64,000 bases of DNA from Botryllus schlosseri (Eukaryota), in NCBI GenBank assembly GCA_051294905.1, contig CM119382.1, positions 11,532,001 through 11,596,000 of the forward strand, written 5' to 3'. The translations under genes and the position numbers were made by a program. Below, in pieces: positions 29,225 through 41,000 of the stretch (position 1 is the stretch's first letter; the number at the start of each line of letters is the position of its first letter). A model generated the notes under the pieces. It worked only from the letters and a program-made list of their open reading frames with translations. It was not told where the DNA came from and did not search any database.

Positions 29225-29291
29225 ATGAACTTCGGCATAAGTAATAGCGACGTTTCCAGAACAGGATTGCTATTATTGGCCATAATATCAG
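29225..29291 (+). CDS. Type-I membrane protein, putative exon 1 (signal peptide)
   Basis: ATG-NFGISNSDVSRTGLLLLAIIS-G|GTATTC, phase 1; joins 31353 to give ...LLLLAIISVGNA-SG. Confidence 0.5.
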
Positions 29292-29396
29292 GTATTCTAA
29301 ATTCTGATGCATGACGCGACTTCCCATGTGAAGACTATTCTAACATCGTTGATGTAGACAGCGAAGGAAATTTTGGCGACTGCCGAAAACACAAGG

Positions 29397-30052
29397 GGTG
29401 TTCAAAAATGACTTTTTTCAAATTGTATTGGCTAGTTGATAAAATTGTTAGGTTACCTAATTTAAGCTTACATACAAAATTTGGTTCTATTCCAGCCAGT
29501 CACCGCTTTGCTACAGGAGAAGAAAGTTTGTATTTATTATATGAAAATAAATAATATAAAATTTGAAAATTTTCTGTTCACCCCATGAAAGTGTTAGGCT
29601 GCCTATAGAAACGATCGTCACCAAATTTGGTTCAATTCCAACCAGTGGAAGCGGAGTTATTGCCGTCGAAAAATTTTGATTTCAATAAAATAGTATTTAC
29701 GGTGAGCACAACTATAATAAATAAACTAAGAATCGGTCACCGTAAATACTATTTTATTCAAATCCAAATTTTTCGACGGCAATAACTCCGCTTCCACTGG
29801 TTGGAATTGAACCAAATTTGGTGAGCATCGTTTCTATAGACAGCCTAACACTTTCATGGGGTGAACAGAAAATTTTCAAATTTTTATATTATTTATTTTT
29901 ATATAATAAATAGAAACTTTCTTATCCTGTAGCAAAGCGGTTACTGGCTGGAATTAAACCAAATTTTGTGTGTAGGCTTAAATTAGGTAACCTAACAATT
30001 TTATCAAGTAGCCAGTACGATTTGAGAAAAAAAAATCATTTTTGAAGAGCCC
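29397..30052. repeat. Foldback element: about 310-bp inverted arms around a 31-nt spacer
   Basis: 29397-29705 is nearly the reverse complement of 29737-30052. Single-arm relatives near 17839 and 53640-53950. Confidence 0.92.
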
Positions 30053-30968
30053 TGCACACCTATTTTAGTGCAATTCCAACCTATAGAAGCATTGCTATAA
30101 GAGAAAAAAGTTTCAAATTTATTTAACCCTATAGCAATGCCGCTATAGGTTGGAATTGAGCCAAAACTGGTGTGCAGCGCTTTTATGGGTAGCCTAACAA
30201 TTTTATCAAGTAGCGAGTATAATCTAAAGAAAAAAGTCAATTTTGAACAGCCGCAACAGTTTCATATTGCCTATCTATATAACCTTATCATACGATTCAT
30301 TTCACCTTTCCCCCTAAAATTAAGTTTAAAGATGTCCTACTCAAATACGATATTTTAGCAGTAATATTCCAGCACATAAATAAATATCCAAATTATCATC
30401 CATCAGCTATTTCTAGATCTTCTAGCCCCTGTCATCCATATATGAGTATCCGACGGAGACAAATATCTCAGGGATGATATATAGGTGTATAACATTGTGC
30501 CTTTTAGATTCGCTATAGGGCGGTAAGTAGGTTACTGACTTACATAACAAATTTAATATTATTTTTTGTATTATATATAGGCTGTTCAGTGTTCAGTTTT
30601 CCTGCAATAACTTGTTCGTAGATACAAATTGATTCTTAATGAACATAGACATACACATACACATTTTCTTTGATATGATTGTGCTATGGCTCGATAACGT
30701 TGGGCTTCCTTCGCATCTCTAACGTCCAAGTACTTCTTATGTTCTCTTCCACCTTCATTTCTTTCTCTATACCACGCGTTTCGCGGAGTCTTGTACATTT
30801 AAAATAATGTTATCATTGTCTTATGCCTAGCTACCGCTAAATTGTATTTGCATCGTATTTCGAATTGTTCCATAATACTGTGTGTTGTTTTTCTTTTCGT
30901 TCCTTATTTATTTATTTATTAGTTATCAACTGTGATAATTCTGTTGTCCTGGGTGGTTTGGCTCTGAA

Positions 30969-30970
<2 letters not shown>

Positions 30971-31006
<36 letters not shown>
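30971..31006. repeat. (CT)18 microsatellite
   Basis: Read directly from the sequence. Confidence 0.97.
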
Positions 31007-31010
<4 letters not shown>

Positions 31011-31352
31011 TGCCATTCTGCTACATAGAATGTATACGCGAAAATTTAAATTCTGTAAGTGGGGTGGGGTGAAGATAGGTGAGTAATGGTGATGATGACA
31101 GCAAAATTTCGAGATTAATGTAATCTTTCTTAATACACGGAAATAAATATATGCATTTGCGAAAAAATAACAGAATCATATTTTGCAAAAGCTTATTCAA
31201 GTCGATCCACTCGTATCGGCTCTTCCCATTTACGTAATACGCGTTCTGAGTGTACGCAATATTATCAACATACATTGGAATATCAAAACTGGATAACGAA
31301 TTTAATGACAGCACTTCAGCGTTTGTCTTCAGGATAAATCGTTCTCTTTCAG

Positions 31353-31541
31353 TCGGCAATGCTTCAGGAAGAAAGAAAAAGATCTTGGACCGATCGGGAG
31401 GGGACATCCAGATCCGCGGTAAATTGTCCAAACATGAACACCGATACCGCTACCCTGGTAAATATTGGGATTACGAGAAGATGGTCCACGTAGTCATCGA
31501 CGTATATAATGTATCACGAGGAGACAGAATCGAACTGACCG
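31353..31541 (+). CDS. Type-I membrane protein, exon 2 (first half of CUB-like domain)
   Basis: Acceptor TTCTCTTTCAG, donor G|GTGAGC, 189 nt, phase 1-1 and open: ...YRYPGKYWDYEKMVHVVIDVYNVSRGDRIELT. Confidence 0.65.
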
Positions 31542-31646
31542 GTGAGCTTCGTTCGATTTTGCCGTTATAAACTTTTGCGGAATCAGAGCGACTGTCGCTT
31601 CAAATACTGACGTTTTGAATTTTAAGTTGTGGTCGTCGGTAATAAG

Positions 31647-32505
31647 TAGGGCGATTTTTTTAACCTAAAAAACGGAAGATTTTGACCTAAAAAATCAAAC
31701 TTTTGACATTTTTTGCTCTTAAAAAACATAATTTTGACCTAACATATGCAAATTAGGTGTTTTTCCACATCATGTTACAAGTGTACTACTTATCTTCATT
31801 TCCGGTTCGAACTATCTGTCCTTACGAAGTAGTTTGGCCAGAAAAAACTTTTTTGACTCAAAAACTGACAAATTTGGTACATGCAAAAACTTTATTTTAA
31901 CCGAATCTGGCCCCATGAAGAATTCCAGTAGTTACATCACGTATTGCGGTAGAGATAATTAAAATTTGTTGTAGTACAACGAAAGATAATTTCCTGCATT
32001 CTCGGGTAGAAAGTGTCTGTCCTTACTAAGTAGCTTGCCCAGAATGGAGAAAGAACGGTTAATAGCAGCAGTTGTTGGCTGACAACACTGAATTTGTGCG
32101 TGCGTACAGCCGTACAGTAGTACACTGCTAGTGACACACCGTGTTGCTTCATTCTGATAATGGTGTCTGCATCACGATTTTTCGTCATGCGCTTCATGAT
32201 ATAAGAACCACGCAATGCCCACGCAGTCTTGCTTCAGTTAGGATATTGCGGTACGTTGAGCATAATACCAGGTCTACCTATTTGTTTCATTTCAATGTTT
32301 ATGATTCACAATGAGCAGACAATGGGCCGTCTACAACGGTAGGCGTAAGGCTAAAAGCTGTAAAATGTCAAACGATAACTTCACCGACAGTGCAAAATCT
32401 ACAATACAAACGAAATGCAGGTTGCAAAAAACTTTTGATTTTTTGACCTACCACTGCAATTTTGTCCTAATTTTGACTTTTTTGACATGTAAAAAAATCG
32501 CTCTA
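31647..32505 (-). mobile_element. hAT deletion derivative (same family as 23453)
   Basis: TIR TAGGGCGATTTTT / AAAAATCGCTCTA; TSD GTAATAAG / TTAATAAG. Confidence 0.88.
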
Positions 32506-33002
32506 TTAATAAGATATTGCCCCAATGGTTGGCAGCCTGTATTCTGAAATTGGAATGAAAAAATTTCACACCTCGTCACGTCTCACCTAATTTTATGGAA
32601 TCAGCGAACAGGATATCATAAATATCATTTCTGTCAATGATTTTTCGTAACAGCGCCGGCTGACAAAATATCACTGATTATAATTATAATCGGGTGTCCT
32701 GTAATTTACTCCAGTCAAGACACACAAATGTACAAATGCGATGAACGTAACATGGTTTAATAGTCTAATTTCCACCGCGGCCTTCTGGTATTAGGCTTAA
32801 TGCCCAACTTGACAATGTTCGATCATTCGGCTAATTTGTGTATAGGCCCGCAGGTTCCCAGCTCCTGGACTGCATTAGACAATGCCCGGTTGCGCGATAT
32901 GATTTTCCGTTTTTGTTTATAAGGATTCCCCCATTCGACAAAAAAGAAGAATGTTGGTGAAATTTAGAGAATATTCCAGATGATAAAGTTGTTCATTCAC
33001 AG

Positions 33003-33239
33003 GCGCCGGCGTCGTCAACTCCAGTTCGTGTTTCTATCTCACCCAATACGTCGACGCGGTTCAAAGACTTTACACCACCGCCTGTTCGATGGATAAAGAA
33101 ACGGTCGGGCGTACGGGATGTCGTGCGATCCGGAACGTAGCTAAACTTTGGATCAACGTGAGCACTGCAGCCTCGTCCGTTAGGAAGAAGCTATTTCGCA
33201 TACGTTACTCCTTGCGTGAATGCAACGCGTATAACGCAG
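33003..33239 (+). CDS. Type-I membrane protein, exon 3 (second half of CUB-like domain)
   Basis: Acceptor TTCATTCACAG, 237 nt, phase 1-1, open, 4 Cys: SSCFYLTQYVD...LWINVSTAASSVRKKLFRIRYSLREC. The donor GTGATG is weak. Confidence 0.6.
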
Positions 33240-33885
33240 GTGATGTCGCCTACTAGTAAATGAAGACACCTTTAAGACTTCAAAGCTCAGTCAAACCGTA
33301 TGATCAAGTTCGACGCGAAGGCATCGTATCGACAATTCTAATACGATATTGTCCTGAAATAAGCCTACAGGCATATTGGAGTAGCCAGGATGTATGAAAT
33401 TATTAGGGGAGTTGCTCAGTTTTATCAAAGCCATGACGTCGCGAATGTATTGTGGAAAATACATGTAGGATATTTAGAGGTGGCAAAGGCACGTTTCACC
33501 GCCCTGGATACTCCACTAGGTATAGGAGAACGTTGTTTACACCTGAAAGTGAGAATATAATTAACATAAGGTAAGTCTGTCAACTTGTGGAGTTTCTGTT
33601 GAAATTGTTCGTAAGATATACTTGATGGTATTGTTGTAAGAAATGTGAAAAAGATATTAATCCTTATATTTGTTGACTACTCATTTGCCTTTTTCGAGAC
33701 AATATAGTCAGCCATTTCGGGAGTATTTAGCAACATTTACCAAAGCTGACTTTTACGCACCCACAAACGTCTCCTGTCCTTCACCTAGCCTACATCAATG
33801 TTTAGCTTATGCTATGATGGAGAACTCATTCAAAGCCGCAATATTGCTATGCAAGATTATTAACATAAGATGTATCTGAATACAG

Positions 33886-33978
33886 GCAACGCTGCCACTT
33901 CATCAATATCTTCCACGACCAAGTCCGAATCCAAGACAGGCTCGACGCCGGTGACACCTCGGGAATCTTCAACGTACA
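33886..33978 (+). CDS. Type-I membrane protein, exon 4 (S/T-rich stalk)
   Basis: AG|...|GTAAG, 93 nt, phase 1-1: NAATSSISSTTKSESKTGSTPVTPRESSTY. Confidence 0.72.
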
Positions 33979-36153
33979 GTAAGGCAATCAATTTATTTAT
34001 ACAGATTCTTTATTCGCGTGAGCAATTGAGCATGTGCGTTGTAACCGAGATTGGGCGAGCAAAGCGATAGTTCGTGTGGGCTACACCCGCCTTTCTTTGT
34101 CAATACATCCGCAGCATATTTCGAATTTACATGGCATGATTCTCCGTTAATGACATCAAATGGCTAATTACGTAATGATGATGATTCAGGGCGCGGTTGT
34201 CAGGATTTCACTTGACAAAAATTTACACTGAAAAGGATTTCGTCTCCAAACCTGCGGAAGTAGAAGTGGAACGGGGATATATGATCGATATATACAGTGA
34301 TGTAGAAACCTAAAACAAAACTAGTTGGGCTAGTTATGCAAAGAGAAAACCGACGTTTGAATAGTCGAATATAACGTAGGCTATAGCCTGCGTCGTTATG
34401 TACCGCCTTTGTACAAGTACATGTATCTGATTAATGATATATATACGTATATATAGCCTACATATACGTAGAGCTCTACACGTAATGTAGAATGTAGTTT
34501 ATATAAATGCAATAACCCCGAAATTTCCCTGGTAGCACAAAACTGATTTGTGACAAGGCATGACGGTGACGGTGTGTGTTGTGAGTATTTTGCACTATTC
34601 TTGCAGCGACATCTTACGGTGAGAAGAAGACAGATCTCATCGTGAACCATCGGTTTTTGCTTCCGCCAGCAGAAATGGGTATGAAACCTACCTTGTAATA
34701 ACCGTAATAAATCCACAAAGGTTTTAAATTGAAGATATTACAGCAATTCGTCTGGAGCTGGACGGTCTCTATCCTGGCACCATTTGAATCTCATCTTGAG
34801 TTGAAATAGGCCAGTGATTCATCTTTTCCTTTACTAACATGCGGAACACAGTCGCGTGATACCAAGTTCTTAATTGAAGACGAGCTCATAAATATTGGAG
34901 ATAGAATTGACATTTCAGTGGACGGGGTTTCAATTTAGAGCCCTGATCTCCCCTGCGTACGCCACAGCACACCACGTACCACCACAGCCGTCACAATTCG
35001 ACTACTGACCGGGCCTAACTACCCGCGACCACCATGACTGGCATATAACAAATCATATGAGTTGATTGTGTGTCTTGATCTCCACGGAACCCTCCGAGAC
35101 TAGCTCGCGGAACACTACGGGTTCCATGGAACACCGGTCAAAAACTTCTGAAATAGGAGTTCACGTTCACATTTCCAGCGATGCATTGTCCGGGTTTCTC
35201 GATCACGGGTAGGCTATAAACTATAAAGGAATATCGGCTGGCTATCAAGCGTCCAGTCCGTCTTTGTGTTCTAATATATTATGATGCAGTTCTGCGCCGA
35301 CATGACCAGATCTGCTTATCAAAATTCACTGAATCGTTTAAATTTCTCCATGCAGTCTTATTTCCACATTGTAGCGTATCCTTTGGTATTGCAAAATGAT
35401 GAAACACATAAGTGGATGAGTAACTCGGACCTCGTGACCAAGAGTCGTGTATGCTAACGTAGCCTGACGTAGCAGAGCTGAAACGTTAAAAGTATGGAGA
35501 TGGCAACACACTTTCATTATCGAGATGACATGACACGTTCGTGTCAACATAGTGTTCTATAGGACACTACGGTGTCAACGTCGCAACTTATGCAATGTAA
35601 TGGCGCTGAGTCGGTCTGCTTACGCCTTGCCCATGTTTTTTTAAGCAATGACGTCACGAATATTCGAGGGTGACGTCATAGGGGGTTAACATTGACAATT
35701 GGAAATATGGGGTAAACATAGCCCCTTTGACGAAAAGGGCTTCCAATCCCCGTCATGTACGGACTAAAAACATCTTTTACAAGGACTACATCGACATGCA
35801 GCAATTTGTGCGGTCATCATCATCCAACATTCATTCTGTACCAACGATCTATAATCTATAACTACGTACTATAGCTGCTGAACCGACTATTTCGCGGGTT
35901 CCAATCTTCCCACATCGTGTACGTCTGCTATAGGGTGGTATTCGTCCGTAGGCACATACATCATGTTTTTTGGAAAGTATATTTTCACAATTATGGCATC
36001 ATTATATATAACTTGAAAAAAAACATTTTTTCAAATGCCCTCTGTTTGAAACAATGATTAAAACATGTTTTAAACACAGTGTTTTAAACAACCATTTGCT
36101 TTAATTGCAACTCTAGTGGTTGTGTTCTCAGACGCTGGCGTGTATTTTTGCAG

Positions 36154-36295
36154 AGCGGACGACGGTCGACAACGTGACGCCGGTCGTGCATTGTCCAGAC
36201 TGTGATTTGAAGTCTCTTCTGCTAGCTGCCGGCCTCTCTGTGGCTGGTGTAATACTCATCATAATTATGATCGTGCTAAAACGTTGCTGCAAGAG
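36154..36295 (+). CDS. Type-I membrane protein, transmembrane exon
   Basis: TTTTTGCAG|...|GTAAG, phase 1-2: ...VHCPDCDLK-SLLLAAGLSVAGVILIIIMIVL-KRCCKR. Confidence 0.85.
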
Positions 36296-36406
36296 GTAAG
36301 TTTTGTATGCTTTGAAGTAGTTTCGTAATTGCTTTTCGTATATATGTACTATTGTGCGGAAATTTTTGGCGCTACTTCTCACCGGTTATTTCCTAGCGAT
36401 ATAGAT

Positions 36407-37106
36407 CGGGGGTCGCCAACACGCGGCCGGCGAGGTCATATTTTGCGGCCCGCGCTCTGATTTGAGATTTCGGAAGAGTGATAAGTTAAGCATTTAGAAA
36501 TGCTGAAAATTATTTCAGTTTCACAATATTGTTGTTGCTGTTGTTTAAAAATAAGCTATTCGCCTGAGCCCAACATCACTATTCCTCACTATCTAAAACG
36601 GCTTCGACGCTGCCAACAGCATGCTATCGAGGGAGAATCAGCCGATATGAATGGAGATATTGGCTTGACGTTCAGTGAACCAGACACTGCCAAGACCAAG
36701 ACGCTTAGAAAACGGCTTAGGGCTTTCCCGAAAGATCAAGCTTTCGGAAGAGACAGCCTTTCAGCTAAAGCGTGTCTCGCCAGCCCCAATATTGATTCCT
36801 TATAGTGCTTGGTCGATGAAAAGCGTTGCCTGGTGTCGCGCGAAGCTTATAGTACAAAATAAAATGAAATTGATTATCATGATATTTCTTGTTGTATATG
36901 TAATACTTTTATCAAGTATTGCTTCTTCTGTGGTAACTATGACAGTCGCCAATGTCAGGGAGCACAGCGGTGTACTGGCGTAAAGTTTTAAAAACGTGGT
37001 TGCTAAACTGTATGGCACTTTTGTCTCAATATTGCATTCTTGCGGCCCGCGGCCACTATGAAATTTAAAAAGTGGCCCGCGGCTCGTTTCGAGTTGGCGA
37101 CCCCTG
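36407..37106. mobile_element. hAT MITE in intron
   Basis: TIR CGGGGGTCGCCAAC / GTTGGCGACCCCTG; TSD ATATAGAT / ATATAGAC. Confidence 0.88.
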
Positions 37107-37162
37107 ATATAGACCAAACAGGCTCCGTTTAATAATCGCCAAAATTTCACGTTCGATTTCAG

Positions 37163-38006
37163 AAAACGCGTAGGGAAACAAAGTGTCTCGTGGTCTCAAC
37201 GGGAAATAAGCGTCATGTCTATCGGAAGCCGAACTTCAGAGACATATTTCGCAGAGTCAGGAGGTCCAGACTCCAGCCAGTTGCCGGGAAGATATATATT
37301 CAGCCCGCCTTTGCAGCGACACGCATGCGAAACAACGCCGAAATTCACCACATTCAGCAGCGACGAAGACCTTTCGAACACTGCCGCTGTATCCTCACGA
37401 AGATACGAAAATTGGCCCGATCGCGTCCCACAGAAGTTCTCAGAGTCAAATATTTATGTTGATAGCAAGCAAGGCCTTGGTGAAGACCAGGCTTTGGCCT
37501 ATGCCGTGGCGCCAGTACCTTCTGTCTCATCTGATCACAAAGCCGCCGGTTTCTCGGGATCGCTGGCTCTGCTATTAAACAGTCGGCCGTTAGGTGATTA
37601 CATGCCACCAATGACTCCCGTATCAATCGAAGACGAGGATGACGATTCTCGTTATAATATGGAGCGTGGGGAATTACATCCCGACCTTCACCAAATGAGC
37701 GACAATGACTATTTCGTTGTGAATGACACGCAAAACCGCCACGCAGATGAAGAATTTTGTTCTCTTGCGATGTCTAGCGACAAGGTAGTTTCTATGACTA
37801 AGGAAAATAGTGGTCGACAAAAAGATCACACTTACGTGAACGTACTGCAGCGAATAGACGAAAATAGTGAAACGCAACCGTGGGACGCGTACGAGGAAAT
37901 GGGAGGGTGTGGAAATCTATCTGCGCGAAAAGATAAAAGAAGCAGCTACGTTTCCATGGCAGAGATCAGAAATCAAATGAACATGGCCGGAATTACGCGG
38001 AAATAA
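37163..38006 (+). CDS. Type-I membrane protein, last exon (about 280-aa Tyr-rich cytoplasmic tail)
   Basis: Acceptor GATTTCAG|A, phase 2, in frame with the supplied ORF 37215-38006; AATAAA at 38023-38028. Confidence 0.88.
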
Positions 38007-41000
38007 TGGTTTTTATCCTCAGAATAAACAATTCCAATGTGACAATACGTCTCGCTTCGGATGCAAAGTTACTGAAGCTACATTTCCTCAGTTTTTGTTT
38101 CTATCGCATCGACGTTACACAAGTCAAGTATGACTGTCTCAGATAATAACCAGAAAGCGCGTCTTTTAATATAGGCATTTGAAAAAGGCGTAGGACACTG
38201 AGCTCCATATTTCATAGCGGAAGAACATTGCATTTAACTTCGACAACTTATTGACACCAATATTTTAGATCATGTAATCGATTTTGTCGATCGTATATAC
38301 GCCTACTTATTATCGACAACCACCTTGATATTGTGAATATATCATAGTCCCTGGGGGTCTGCAGACTAGTTTTAAAGGGTCCGCGAAAGGCAATTGTTGA
38401 AACTACAACTATAAATTATAAAACTAACTTCATTGTCCTAATGTGCCCACATTTTTCTCATTTCCAATGCTTCCCACTAGCCGCAATGACCACACGGACG
38501 ATGCGAAGACATCCAACTCATCAACTCCTCAAATCCCAATGTTATAGTCTACTCAGAATTGAACCCTGGTTGTGCGCAATGTGCAGTTCAAAATATACCC
38601 CAGTCCCCAATGCATGCATTCAAAAGAATGTAGGGGTCTGGGCTAAAATAAAGTTAAGGACCCCTGGACTACATAGTAGATATTCACGGTAGTTACGCCT
38701 ATGCACCAAAAACTCTGTTAGAACTACAGCTGATTTGGTCTGTTTTCAAGTAGTATTGCAAATTTTCTTTGAACGAATATAATCTGCCTGTCTGTCTGTG
38801 TGTATGTCGTGTGTAGGTCTACATCGCATAGAATGGGATAGGACAGAGGGATGCGTGATAATTTGTCATATATGTAACAATAAAAGCAATATCCTCCGGA
38901 AATAAACCCTCTATGCAACACGAGAGGATGGTGCTGTAGAGTCACGCATTCGGGGCAGCAAATTACGACTCAGTACCAAAGCGTCTAATTTAAAATCACA
39001 GTCGCAACTATGGGTCAATTTCGTGGTATCCAGTCTCGACGTCTTCGGAAGTGGAACCTACCTCGAATTTCTACTCTGGTTCCATCGTGACCACCATTAC
39101 ACAAAATCAGCGAATCGTTGGAAATAGTAGAGTGGTAACTTGCTGCGACTCATATCTATGCAGCTCGCCATTTACTTACAGACGTGGTCCAAGTAGTCAG
39201 CACTACTTCTCAAGTAGAATTACAAGTAATAGGCTACCGTGCCACTTAATACTACTCAATTACAAGTAGAATGGTTTGTTTATTGCAGTATAATGTTTGG
39301 GATAGTGATGGTATATCCTTGAGTTTGCCAAGTAGAAACGACATCTTCGCAATATGATTCTCATTGCAAAAAGTCTTTTGAGTATTGGATGGAACCCTCA
39401 GTTCGGTTTTATCAGTTCAACATAACACAAAAATTGCGATACAATGCAAAGAGTTGTCGAAACTAGTCTTTGAAATATTTTGTATTCGGCGCTGTTTATC
39501 ATATTAACCGTGACGAGTCTCGGAAAACCTTTGGAAACCAAAAGGAATCACAAGCAAAATGTTCGTCGGGGAGCCCTGATGTAGGGAACTCCGGGCATGA
39601 CCGAGATATTTTATAATGATACGAAGTATCTCGAGGTCACGTTGTCTTGTGATGCGACTATAATTATTCCCACGCGTTACTGGCGTTTACTATATCGTAT
39701 GTCGAACACAAAATATCAGATAGCTCCAATACAAAGGCCATGTCGACCATAATTCAGTGAAATATGGTGTAAATATGGCGATAAGAAGGCGGACAGTTGG
39801 CCTACCATTAAGACAATTGTTTACACAAATCGTTCGATATGGGAGTAAAATCATATCAGACTGATGGTAAATTTCACTCAATTGCATTAGTAATAACAAC
39901 ATACTCGATGCCGACTACCGGTAATCTTCATTCACTAACGCTTGCGACTAATAAAAGCCACGCTAACCTAACTTGCATAGCTAGCCTACTTCGCTGAATA
40001 TTTTATTTGATAAAATCATATCTTTTCTGTTGGTACAGCGCCACTATTTGCCGGTCTTTGAAGTCCGTTTTTCCGTACGCACTTATCACTGCAGTGATGT
40101 TTTAGAGCTGGACGCGAATGTGGGAAGGGTCAACAGCATGTCTAAACCGCGGCCTTAAAATAGAGTATGCTTAGCTAAAAGCCCGACAAACACATTTCTT
40201 ACACAAACCATGACAAATCTTGGGTGTCCATGATTGCATGATTTTAAAGTAAACCCAATAACCTGATTAACGGTTCGGACACTTTGCCATATTCGAAATT
40301 TCTGATTTCTGAAATTTCTGAAAGTTCAACATGCCGTGTCGTTCTCCACATATTGTATTTTCTTTATCTCCACTACGAAACATCGCCTCCGTGTTATTTT
40401 AGGGATGTATGACGCTCTCGATGTTGGTGGCAATATACCTACGACTTCGTAAAAGGGAAGCCAATCTTATATTGACCGGTCCGTCCTTTTTAAGGCCAAA
40501 CTCTTCATGTGGTTCTGGAGTAGAACTGCATCTAACTATATTCTTCGCAGAAGGGTCGTGTTAGGACATAGACTACGGTGGCAGCGTAGCATGTGAGATA
40601 CGATGCAGAGTACAATTAGATGATAGGAATTGGTATTTTGTTATCAAGCCCGAGGTGGCCACGGCCCGTTTCATATGAACTGAACTTGATGCTTGTTGTT
40701 TGTTGTATTTCTTTCTGATTCGGAATATATTTCAATTTCCAAGTTTTGGCGAATTCAGTGATTCCAATTCTAATCTAATTTATATTTAATAAAAAATACT
40801 GCGTAGCTATAATTCTAATTCTAATCATATTTGAAAAAAATGGAAATTTTCTAATTGCCAACTTCGTTGTCAATGCTGTTCGTGTTTTGACGCGAAACAC
40901 ACAGCCTCGCGAAACGCAGTCGCCGATAGTATCAATTTCATAAGTTTTCCATAAGTTTCTCACCAGTCAATTTCAATTTCATAAGTTGCACTCACTTCAT

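What the first reader, a model, noticed from the sequence alone, without database searches (positions are those of the whole stretch)
29225..38006. Unassigned single-pass receptor/adaptor: CUB-like domain, CxxC stalk and 11-tyrosine tail
Six exons splice in phase (1-1-1-1-2) to 1572 nt, about 523 aa. The parts are a signal peptide, a domain with CUB-like spacing (YP..Y...V.I.V..GDRIEL; C.Y...Y.D; LWI...S....F.I.Y), an S/T stalk, HCPDCD just outside the membrane, one TM helix, RCCKRKR (likely palmitoylated) and a low-complexity tail. The tail carries Grb2-type YENW and YVNV, PI3K-type YEEM and YVSM, plus YMPP, YIFS and others. It has no catalytic domain, so it looks like a phosphotyrosine scaffold. 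It is conceptually like CDCP1/DCBLD or lymphocyte transmembrane adaptors, with a CD3-like membrane-proximal CxxC, but I cannot match it to a named family. It is a candidate lineage-specific immune or developmental receptor and the best candidate here for an undescribed system.
Basis: partly seen in the sequence, partly recalled or inferred. Interest (0 to 1): 0.78.

Follow-up and report, generated by a model that had tools for sequence, protein, structure and literature searches.

The report
Orphan sea-squirt membrane protein, tyrosine-rich tail
This is very probably a real sea-squirt gene for a single-pass membrane protein with a small unclassified outer domain and a long floppy inner tail of conserved tyrosine docking motifs, but it has only one detectable relative and its function is inferred.

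Summary
The six-exon model is in the sequence as described. All introns are GT-AG, the phases are 1-1-1-1-2, and the 1572 nt give 523 aa with no stop. The parts are a signal peptide, a ~140-aa ectodomain, an S/T stalk, HCPDCD, one TM helix, KRCCKRKR and a 281-aa tail with 11 Tyr.

Codon statistics support exons 2, 3 and 6, and exon 4 less cleanly. No further cassette exon was found. The gene is single-copy in a 495-Mb ascidian-type genome.

A search of 1.84 billion proteins found one relative, a 265-aa ORF 79% identical to the tail. It keeps all 11 Tyr, and the Tyr motifs are better conserved than the rest (91% vs 75%, p=0.01). AlphaFold sees no fold in the tail.

The CUB reading is not supported. 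Pfam is blank for each exon, and a CUB profile built from this genome does not match the spliced protein.

Splice junctions could not be confirmed. The four runs laid gave no reads on the exons.

Best reading: a lineage-restricted, non-catalytic docking receptor that is tyrosine-phosphorylated. That is a known kind, built here from unrelated sequence.

The scan earlier noted a similar orphan tyrosine-tail receptor elsewhere in this genome (s1-237967). I found no sequence similarity between the two.

The parts
29225..29291 (+). Exon 1. It holds the start codon (A at -3) and most of the signal peptide (residues 1-22), and ends in phase 1.
   Evidence: One search gives the translation and the GT donor. 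One search finds no upstream in-frame ATG, and one search places an in-frame stop 174 nt upstream.
31353..31541 (+). Exon 2. It encodes the end of the signal peptide and the first half of the ectodomain (residues 23-85), including the YP..Y and GDRIEL motifs and two N-glycosylation sequons.
   Evidence: AG/GT bounds, phase 1-1. (codon score best in the model frame; 0 of 2000 intron windows as high). (single copy in the genome).
33003..33239 (+). Exon 3. It encodes the second half of the ectodomain (residues 86-164), with four Cys (95, 113, 125, 159) and the motifs LWINVS and FRIRY.
   Evidence: (single copy); all of its sampled words are held by X12 (67 M letters, kind not recorded), and 0.73 by runs of two further studies.
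33886..33978 (+). Exon 4. It encodes the Ser/Thr-rich stalk (residues 165-195), probably O-glycosylated.
   Evidence: 49% S/T; no intron window scored as high, but a reverse frame outscores the model frame (16.1 vs 11.1).
36154..36295 (+). Exon 5. It encodes the end of the stalk, the CxxC motif, the transmembrane helix and the juxtamembrane CC, and ends in phase 2.
   Evidence: highest hydropathy at residues 217-237.
36189..36206 (+). HCPDCD, the membrane-proximal extracellular CxxC (C209, C212).
   Evidence: Read directly. A role in dimerisation is inference only.
36216..36278 (+). Transmembrane helix, residues 217-237.
   Evidence: Kyte-Doolittle 19-residue maximum of 2.95. The basic stretch KRCCKRKR on the C-terminal side fits the positive-inside rule.
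36285..36290 (+). Juxtamembrane Cys-Cys (C240, C241), candidate palmitoylation sites.
   Evidence: Read. Function is inferred by analogy with the raft-targeted adaptors described in PMC2803307.
37163..38006 (+). Exon 6. It encodes the cytoplasmic tail (residues 243-523) and the stop codon. The tail has 11 Tyr: two YxN, two YxxM and one YxxP motif, plus the acidic cluster EDEDDD.
   Evidence: the relative P0001 is 79% identical, keeps all 11 Tyr and has a single 1-aa indel. AlphaFold pLDDT 30 with no fold; no Pfam domain.
38023..38028 (+). AATAAA, the likely polyadenylation signal, 17 nt after the stop codon.
   Evidence: the only AATAAA/ATTAAA within 400 nt downstream. Use as a poly(A) signal is inferred.

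Best explanation
This is a real, single-copy, lineage-restricted gene of an ascidian-type genome. It encodes a 523-aa type I membrane glycoprotein that works as a non-catalytic docking (scaffolding) receptor.

Proposed mechanism:
1. A small, N-glycosylated, probably beta-rich ectodomain of about 140 aa sits on an O-glycosylated stalk and binds an unknown ligand or co-receptor.
2. The membrane-proximal CxxC and the juxtamembrane CC may give disulfide pairing and palmitoyl-dependent membrane partitioning.
3. On clustering, cytoplasmic tyrosine kinases phosphorylate the disordered tail.
4. The conserved motifs then recruit SH2 proteins: Grb2-type at YENW and YVNV, PI3K p85-type at YEEM and YVSM, and Crk/Abl-type at YMPP.

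Shown here: the gene model is self-consistent, the coding signal is present, the topology features are there, there is no recognisable domain, the tail is disordered, and the Tyr motifs are preferentially conserved in one relative.

Inferred: splicing as modelled, expression, phosphorylation, the binding partners, palmitoylation and dimerisation.
For: -: six GT-AG exons in phase give 523 aa with no stop.
- codon-usage scores favour the model frame in exons 2, 3 and 6, and no intron window scored as high as exons 2-4.
- no alternative cassette exons were found.
- exon 6 is the longest open frame in the window.
- the signal-peptide h-region, TM helix, five N-glycosylation sequons outside against two inside, and an AATAAA 17 nt after the stop all fit the topology.
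- there is one relative (79% identity over 265 aa, the same C-terminus, a single in-frame 1-aa gap), so the frame is under selection.
- 11 of 11 Tyr are conserved, and positions -1..+3 around Tyr are 91% identical against 75% elsewhere (Fisher p=0.01).
- the tail has 2 YxN, 2 YxxM and 1 YxxP motifs.
- the tail has no Pfam domain and AlphaFold pLDDT is 30, so it is a disordered tail without an enzyme.
- words of exon 3 and of the 3' end of the gene are held by small contig sets of three studies (P5, P6, P13). One search shows that two runs of study P5 lack the unique intron DNA, so these runs look like transcriptomes.
Against: - No splice junction was seen. The four runs laid (two contig sets, two raw RNA-seq runs read at 6-13%) gave zero depth on exons 2-5 and on the start of exon 6.
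- The runs that hold the exon words are of unrecorded kind.
- Only one relative exists, and only for the last exon. The conservation test therefore rests on a single pairwise comparison at 79% identity.
- Motif counts are not significant on their own. About 0.5 YxN and 0.4 YxxM would be expected by chance from the tail's composition (my estimate, not computed with a tool).
- Four of the motifs also fit the YxxPhi endocytic sorting signal, and an acidic cluster is present.
- No phosphorylation or binding data exist.
- The ectodomain fold is unknown.
Confidence: 0.5

Rival explanations
1. It is an adhesion, trafficking or cargo receptor. The tail tyrosines serve mainly as YxxPhi endocytic or sorting signals that bind clathrin adaptors. 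The EDEDDD cluster acts as a TGN-retrieval signal. SH2 docking is not the main role.
For:: four motifs (YFVV, YVNV, YEEM, YVSM) fit YxxPhi, and an acidic cluster with flanking Ser lies at residues 399-404. These features are conserved in P0001. The glycosylated stalk and small ectodomain also fit an adhesion or sorting receptor.
Against: Eleven conserved Tyr in a disordered 281-aa tail is far more than sorting needs. Several motifs (YENW, YMPP, YIFS, YVDS) do not fit YxxPhi. Sorting signals usually lie near the membrane or the C-terminus, not spread over the whole tail (established knowledge, not tested here).
Confidence: 0.2
2. It is a highly diverged member of a known CUB-domain co-receptor family (of the neuropilin, DCBLD, NETO or CDCP1 kind). 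Its CUB domain has lost the first disulfide and has drifted beyond what sequence profiles can detect.
For: By eye, three spacings fit a CUB domain: YP..Y to the C.Y..YVD cysteine is 38 residues, C95 to C113 is 18 residues, and C113 to F.I.Y is about 40 residues. The domain is bounded by phase-1 introns. Many CUB domains of this genome also lack cysteines and are split by an intron near the middle. hhalign's only aligned stretch is the terminal F.I.Y strand.
Against: Pfam CUB is not found in either half even at E<=10. The CUB HMM built from this genome scores -0.1 bits with a wrong alignment. hhalign gives probability 0.4%. The PDB sequence search is blank. The language-model feature search gives no CUB cluster. 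The tail has one YxxP motif, not the seven or eight of DCBLD (PMC6029619).
Confidence: 0.15
3. The model is wrong or the gene is dead. Exon 6 would belong to another transcript, or the upstream exons would be chance open frames, so the 523-aa protein is never made.
For: One search shows no reads on any exon in four runs. The relative is known only for exon 6. Exons 1 and 5 have neutral codon scores.
Against: All ten splice sites are canonical and in phase, and the product has a coherent architecture of signal peptide, ectodomain, stalk, TM helix and tail. Exons 2-4 outscore every sampled intron window. Exon 6 has no signal or TM segment of its own, and it starts at a strong acceptor in the phase left by the TM exon. 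Exon 3 words occur in small contig sets of three studies and in two other organisms.
Confidence: 0.12

Closest known systems
DCBLD1/DCBLD2 (ESDN) scaffolding receptors of vertebrates (PMC6029619)
   Same: Both are type I single-pass receptors without an enzymatic domain. Both have a long intracellular region whose conserved tyrosine motifs recruit SH2 adaptors after phosphorylation by cytoplasmic kinases.
   Different: DCBLD has a CUB + LCCL + FV/FVIII ectodomain and seven or eight YxxP motifs for CRK/CRKL. Here there is one unclassified domain of about 140 aa, no profile match to CUB and one YxxP motif among mixed motif types. No sequence similarity was detected.
Lymphocyte transmembrane adaptor proteins (LAT, PAG/Cbp, NTAL, LIME; PMC2803307, PMC2194117)
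   Same: Both have a single TM helix, juxtamembrane cysteines suited to palmitoylation, and a long tail with several tyrosine motifs, including Grb2- and p85-type sites. Neither has a catalytic domain.
   Different: These adaptors have a short extracellular part and a CxxC dicysteine. This protein has a glycosylated ectodomain plus stalk of about 190 aa and a CC pair. There is no sequence similarity.
CDCP1 (from my own knowledge, not tested here)
   Same: Both are single-pass glycoproteins with a tyrosine-phosphorylated docking tail, and CDCP1's ectodomain is also only weakly CUB-like.
   Different: CDCP1 has a large multi-domain ectodomain and a short tail with a few Src and PKC-delta sites. 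No similarity was found here.
Second orphan 'docking receptor' of this same genome (earlier scan note s1-237967)
   Different: It lies on another piece of the genome. A six-frame search of the whole genome with this tail and with both ectodomain exons found only this locus itself, so no paralogy is detectable.

Membership tests
CUB domain (Pfam PF00431) | Significant match to a CUB sequence profile | tested here: not met
   Pfam searched per exon at E<=10 finds no CUB. A CUB HMM from 30 domains of this genome scores -0.1 bits on the spliced protein. hhalign gives probability 0.4%.
CUB domain (Pfam PF00431) | Two conserved disulfides (C1-C2, C3-C4) in the canonical spacing | tested here: inconclusive
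   The C1-C2 pair is absent. C95-C113, 18 residues apart, could be C3-C4. An extra pair, C125 and C159, is also present. Many CUB domains of this genome also lack cysteines.
CUB domain (Pfam PF00431) | Ten-strand beta-sandwich (jelly-roll) fold | not testable with these tools
   The spliced ectodomain has no reference, so it could not be handed to the folding tool. The two exon halves folded together gave pLDDT 29-40, which the tool reports as no verdict.
DCBLD1/2 scaffolding receptors | Ectodomain of CUB + LCCL + FV/FVIII (discoidin) domains | tested here: not met
   No Pfam domain is found in any exon. Only about 140 aa of globular ectodomain is present. The definition comes from PMC6029619.
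DCBLD1/2 scaffolding receptors | Seven or eight intracellular YxxP motifs | tested here: not met
   There is one YxxP motif, YMPP at residue 389.
Transmembrane adaptor proteins (LAT/PAG/NTAL/LIME) | Short extracellular domain | tested here: not met
   About 190 residues lie between the predicted signal-peptide cleavage site and the TM helix. The definition comes from PMC2803307.
Transmembrane adaptor proteins (LAT/PAG/NTAL/LIME) | Juxtamembrane dicysteine palmitoylation motif (CxxC) | tested here: inconclusive
   Adjacent Cys residues (C240, C241) lie three residues after the TM helix. They are CC, not CxxC, and palmitoylation cannot be tested here.
Transmembrane adaptor proteins (LAT/PAG/NTAL/LIME) | Long cytoplasmic tail with several tyrosine phosphorylation motifs | tested here: met
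   The tail is 281 aa with 11 Tyr, including YxN, YxxM and YxxP motifs. All 11 Tyr are conserved in P0001.
CD3-type signalling chains | ITAM (YxxL/I x6-12 YxxL/I) in the tail | tested here: not met
   No ITAM and no ITIM-like motif is present. Only the stalk CxxC resembles CD3, and that resemblance is recalled from my own knowledge.
Non-catalytic tyrosine-phosphorylated receptors (a functional class, not a homology family) | Type I membrane protein with no enzymatic domain and conserved cytoplasmic Tyr motifs | tested here: met
   topology; no domain, disordered tail; motifs and their conservation.
Non-catalytic tyrosine-phosphorylated receptors (a functional class, not a homology family) | Actual tyrosine phosphorylation and SH2 recruitment | not testable with these tools
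   This needs phosphoproteomics or pull-down experiments.

The most novel reading that the evidence does not exclude
This gene and the other orphan tyrosine-tail receptor noted in this genome (s1-237967) could belong to a fast-evolving, tunicate-specific class of non-catalytic docking receptors. They would have new ectodomain folds and be used in haemocyte immunity or allorecognition. That would be an independent invention of the logic of vertebrate immunoreceptor and adaptor signalling.
Probability: 0.12. Interest if true: 0.6.

Novelty: new member of a known kind. Interest (0 to 1): 0.3.

Why it matters
Tunicates are the closest living relatives of vertebrates but lack the vertebrate antigen receptors and their adaptors. 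Knowing which membrane proteins feed the conserved SH2 machinery (Grb2, PI3K, Crk) in them bears on how immunoreceptor-style signalling arose.

This gene is a concrete, testable candidate. It is small, single-copy and has clear motifs. But lineage-restricted orphan membrane proteins are common in fast-evolving tunicate genomes, and nothing here yet ties it to a particular process. It is of modest interest until expression and phosphorylation data exist.

Tried and rejected
1. RNA support for the junctions. Read laying on 31330-37329 with X9, X10 (contigs) and X17, X21 (raw RNA-seq) gave zero depth on every exon covered. Only intronic repeats drew reads.

2. Relatives.
   - HMMER of the tail against 1.84 billion representatives found only P0001.
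   - Word-indexed searches with the tail, exon 3 and exon 2 open frames found P0001 or nothing. The length window of those searches excludes full-length proteins.
   - The DNA of the P0001 contig was not available.

3. Family assignment.
   - Pfam per exon found nothing meaningful.
   - PDB sequence searches of both ectodomain halves found nothing.
   - Atlas feature searches gave nothing for exon 3 and the tail.
   - Exon 2 gave bacterial RHS/YD-repeat clusters at 0.93 but with only 107-123 shared features. I treat that as a chance or compositional hit.

4. The CUB hypothesis was tested offline and not supported.

5. Folding the two ectodomain halves as two chains gave no verdict, with score 0.00 and pLDDT 29-40 (after six calls in which the tool could not be reached). 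This is not evidence either way.

6. Steps left out. The spliced 523-aa protein and its 140-aa ectodomain have no reference. I did not type them into the structure, Pfam, PDB, atlas or contig look-up tools. All work on the spliced product was done in scripts from window coordinates.

7. Literature. No paper describes such a protein in ascidians, and the accession of the P0001 sample appears in no held paper.

Full report
**What is there**

The exons are 29225-29291, 31353-31541, 33003-33239, 33886-33978, 36154-36295 and 37163-38006 on the + strand. Every intron is GT-AG with a pyrimidine-rich acceptor. The exon-end phases are 1-1-1-1-2. The 1572 nt translate to 523 residues without a stop.

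The start codon has A at -3. There is no upstream in-frame ATG before an in-frame stop 174 nt upstream. The only AATAAA within 400 nt downstream lies 17 nt after the stop.

The product reads, in order:
- a signal peptide with an 11-residue hydrophobic core and a small-residue cleavage site;
- about 140 residues carrying four of the five extracellular N-glycosylation sequons and four Cys, all in the exon 3 half;
- a stalk that is 49% Ser/Thr;
- HCPDCD, four residues before a 21-residue hydrophobic helix (217-237; 19-residue Kyte-Doolittle maximum 2.95);
- KRCCKRKR;
- a 281-residue tail with exactly 11 Tyr.

**Is it a real gene?**

Several independent lines say yes.
- The exon 6 frame (297 open codons) is the longest open frame in the 64-kb window.
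- I trained a codon-usage log-odds score on long open frames of unrelated CUB-array genes of the same genome, scored against this gene's introns. It puts exons 2, 3 and 6 best in the model frame among all six frames.
- None of 2000 random intron windows scored as high as exons 2, 3 or 4. For exon 4, however, one reverse frame scores higher than the model frame (16.1 vs 11.1). The hydrophobic TM exon and the short first exon are neutral. Part of this signal is simply the absence of stops.
- A scan of introns 1-4 for further in-phase cassette exons with a polypyrimidine tract and a positive codon score found none.
- The gene is single-copy. Six-frame searches of the 495-Mb assembly with exon 2, exon 3 and the tail found only this locus.

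**Transcription**

This is the weak point. I used two contig sets (X9, X10) and two raw RNA-seq runs (X17, X21, read at 6-13%). Depth was zero on every exon, and only intronic repeats drew reads. No junction is therefore confirmed.

There is indirect support.
- X9 and X10 hold about half of the sampled words of 37163-38300. Yet they have nothing on 37163-37329 or on the unique intron DNA. That pattern fits 3'-biased transcriptome data rather than genomic DNA.
- Exon 3 words are held fully by X12 (67 M letters, same study). Runs of two further studies hold 0.73. Runs labelled as two other organisms hold a smaller share.
- The kind of these runs is not on record, so this remains an inference.

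**Relatives**

HMMER of the tail against 1.84 billion cluster representatives gave a single hit, P0001. It is 265 aa and 79% identical, and comes from a 3.1-kb Logan contig whose DNA could not be fetched. The word-indexed search gave the same single protein. Searches with the exon 2 and exon 3 open frames gave nothing. Those last two searches cannot see full-length proteins because of their length window.

P0001 begins at an internal Met of exon 6, and 502 nt of uncalled sequence lie upstream of it. It is therefore probably an ORF call on genomic DNA of a related species.

Its value is this. The frame stays open to the same C-terminus, with one 1-residue gap in 266 columns. All 11 tyrosines are kept. 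Positions -1 to +3 around them are 91% identical against 75% for the rest (Fisher p=0.01). This is modest, single-comparison evidence that the Tyr motifs are the constrained part of the tail.

**The tail**

Pfam finds nothing credible in it. AlphaFold2 on the two-sequence alignment gives mean pLDDT 30 with no folded segment. That fits intrinsic disorder, although the alignment is shallow.

Motif counts:
- YxN twice (YENW, YVNV);
- YxxM twice (YEEM, YVSM);
- YxxP once (YMPP);
- YxxPhi four times;
- no ITAM, ITIM or dileucine motif;
- one acidic cluster (EDEDDD).

At 3.9%, Tyr is high for a disordered region, going by established knowledge of disordered-region composition. The individual motif counts are not significant by themselves.

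**The ectodomain**

YP..Y lies 38 residues before a C.Y..YVD cysteine. A second Cys follows 18 residues on, and F.I.Y lies about 40 residues later. Phase-1 introns bound the domain.

It fails every test I could run.
- Pfam searched per exon at E<=10 shows no CUB.
- I took 30 complete CUB domains found in this same genome with PF00431, extracted them and built an HMM. With all filters off it scores -0.1 bits on the spliced protein, with a nonsensical alignment.
- hhalign gives probability 0.4% and aligns only the last strand.
- PDB sequence searches and language-model feature searches give nothing usable.

Folding the two exon halves as two chains returned no verdict. The ectodomain is therefore unclassified. 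A very diverged CUB remains possible, at about 15%.

**How it most likely works**

The architecture is that of a non-catalytic, tyrosine-phosphorylated docking receptor. An unknown ligand or co-receptor engages the glycosylated ectodomain. The extracellular CxxC may pair chains. The juxtamembrane CC may be palmitoylated and bias the protein to ordered membrane, as described for the raft-targeted adaptors LAT, PAG, NTAL and LIME (PMC2803307). Cytoplasmic kinases phosphorylate the disordered tail, and SH2 proteins of the Grb2, p85 and Crk types dock there.

Only the sequence features and their conservation are shown. Every biochemical step is inferred. I put this reading at about 0.5.

The rivals are:
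- a sorting or adhesion receptor that uses the same motifs as YxxPhi signals (0.2);
- a diverged CUB co-receptor of a known family (0.15);
- a wrong or dead gene model (0.12).

**Comparison with what is known**

It works like DCBLD1/2, which are described as scaffolding receptors whose conserved intracellular YxxP motifs bind CRKL after Fyn or Abl phosphorylation (PMC6029619). It also works like the lymphocyte transmembrane adaptors (PMC2803307; LIME in PMC2194117). It is a member of neither.

The DCBLD ectodomain architecture and its YxxP count are not met. The short ectodomain of the adaptors is not met. The CD3 comparison fails on the ITAM.

I found no sequence similarity between the two. 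If they form a class, it is a class by design rather than by detectable descent.

**Verdict**

In terms of novelty it is a new, sequence-orphan member of a known kind of receptor.

Interest is modest (0.3). Orphan membrane proteins are common in tunicates, and neither expression nor function is yet shown. The gene is nonetheless a clean candidate for simple experiments.

Noticed in passing
window:29413-30030: Intron 1 holds a near-perfect palindrome of about 620 bp. It has nested inverted arms of 161 nt (90% complementary) and 148 nt (97% complementary, 31 nt apart), and smaller related hairpins follow up to 30232. It looks like a foldback-type repeat.
   Followed up: partly
window:31600-32500: Intron 2 holds a high-copy repeat. 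RNA-seq reads and contigs of all four runs pile up here at 90-95% identity (word depth up to several thousand), with many internal joints. It is a dispersed repeat family that is transcribed somewhere in the genome.
   Followed up: no
window:36402-37111: Intron 5 holds a 710-bp MITE-like element with 22-nt terminal inverted repeats (GGGGTCGCCAAC core, 86% complementary). Moderate read depth suggests many copies.
   Followed up: partly
window:30972-31008: A (CT)n microsatellite of about 37 nt lies in intron 1.
   Followed up: no
window:42639-43310 (-): An open frame of 224 aa matches the Hemingway/CFAP97 domain (PF13879, E=2e-25). It is the neighbouring gene downstream, on the opposite strand.
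   Followed up: partly
window:53965-54339 (+): This exon matches the start of the animal haem peroxidase domain (PF03098, E=8e-17).
   Followed up: partly
window:722-1582 (+): A 287-aa open frame carries a reverse transcriptase domain (PF00078, E=2e-30). It is a non-LTR retroelement fragment.
   Followed up: no
window:18859-19674 (-): A 272-aa open frame gives only a weak, sub-threshold Ripply hit (E=0.0064, 17.5 bits against a cut-off of 27). It remains unexplained.
   Followed up: no
G000:C10:15993335-16023000, G000:C6:7189950-7191782 and G000:C6:22470878-22514455: Large intron-poor arrays of tandem CUB domains lie in open frames of 750-1080 aa in this genome. Many of these CUB domains have no cysteines.
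   Followed up: no
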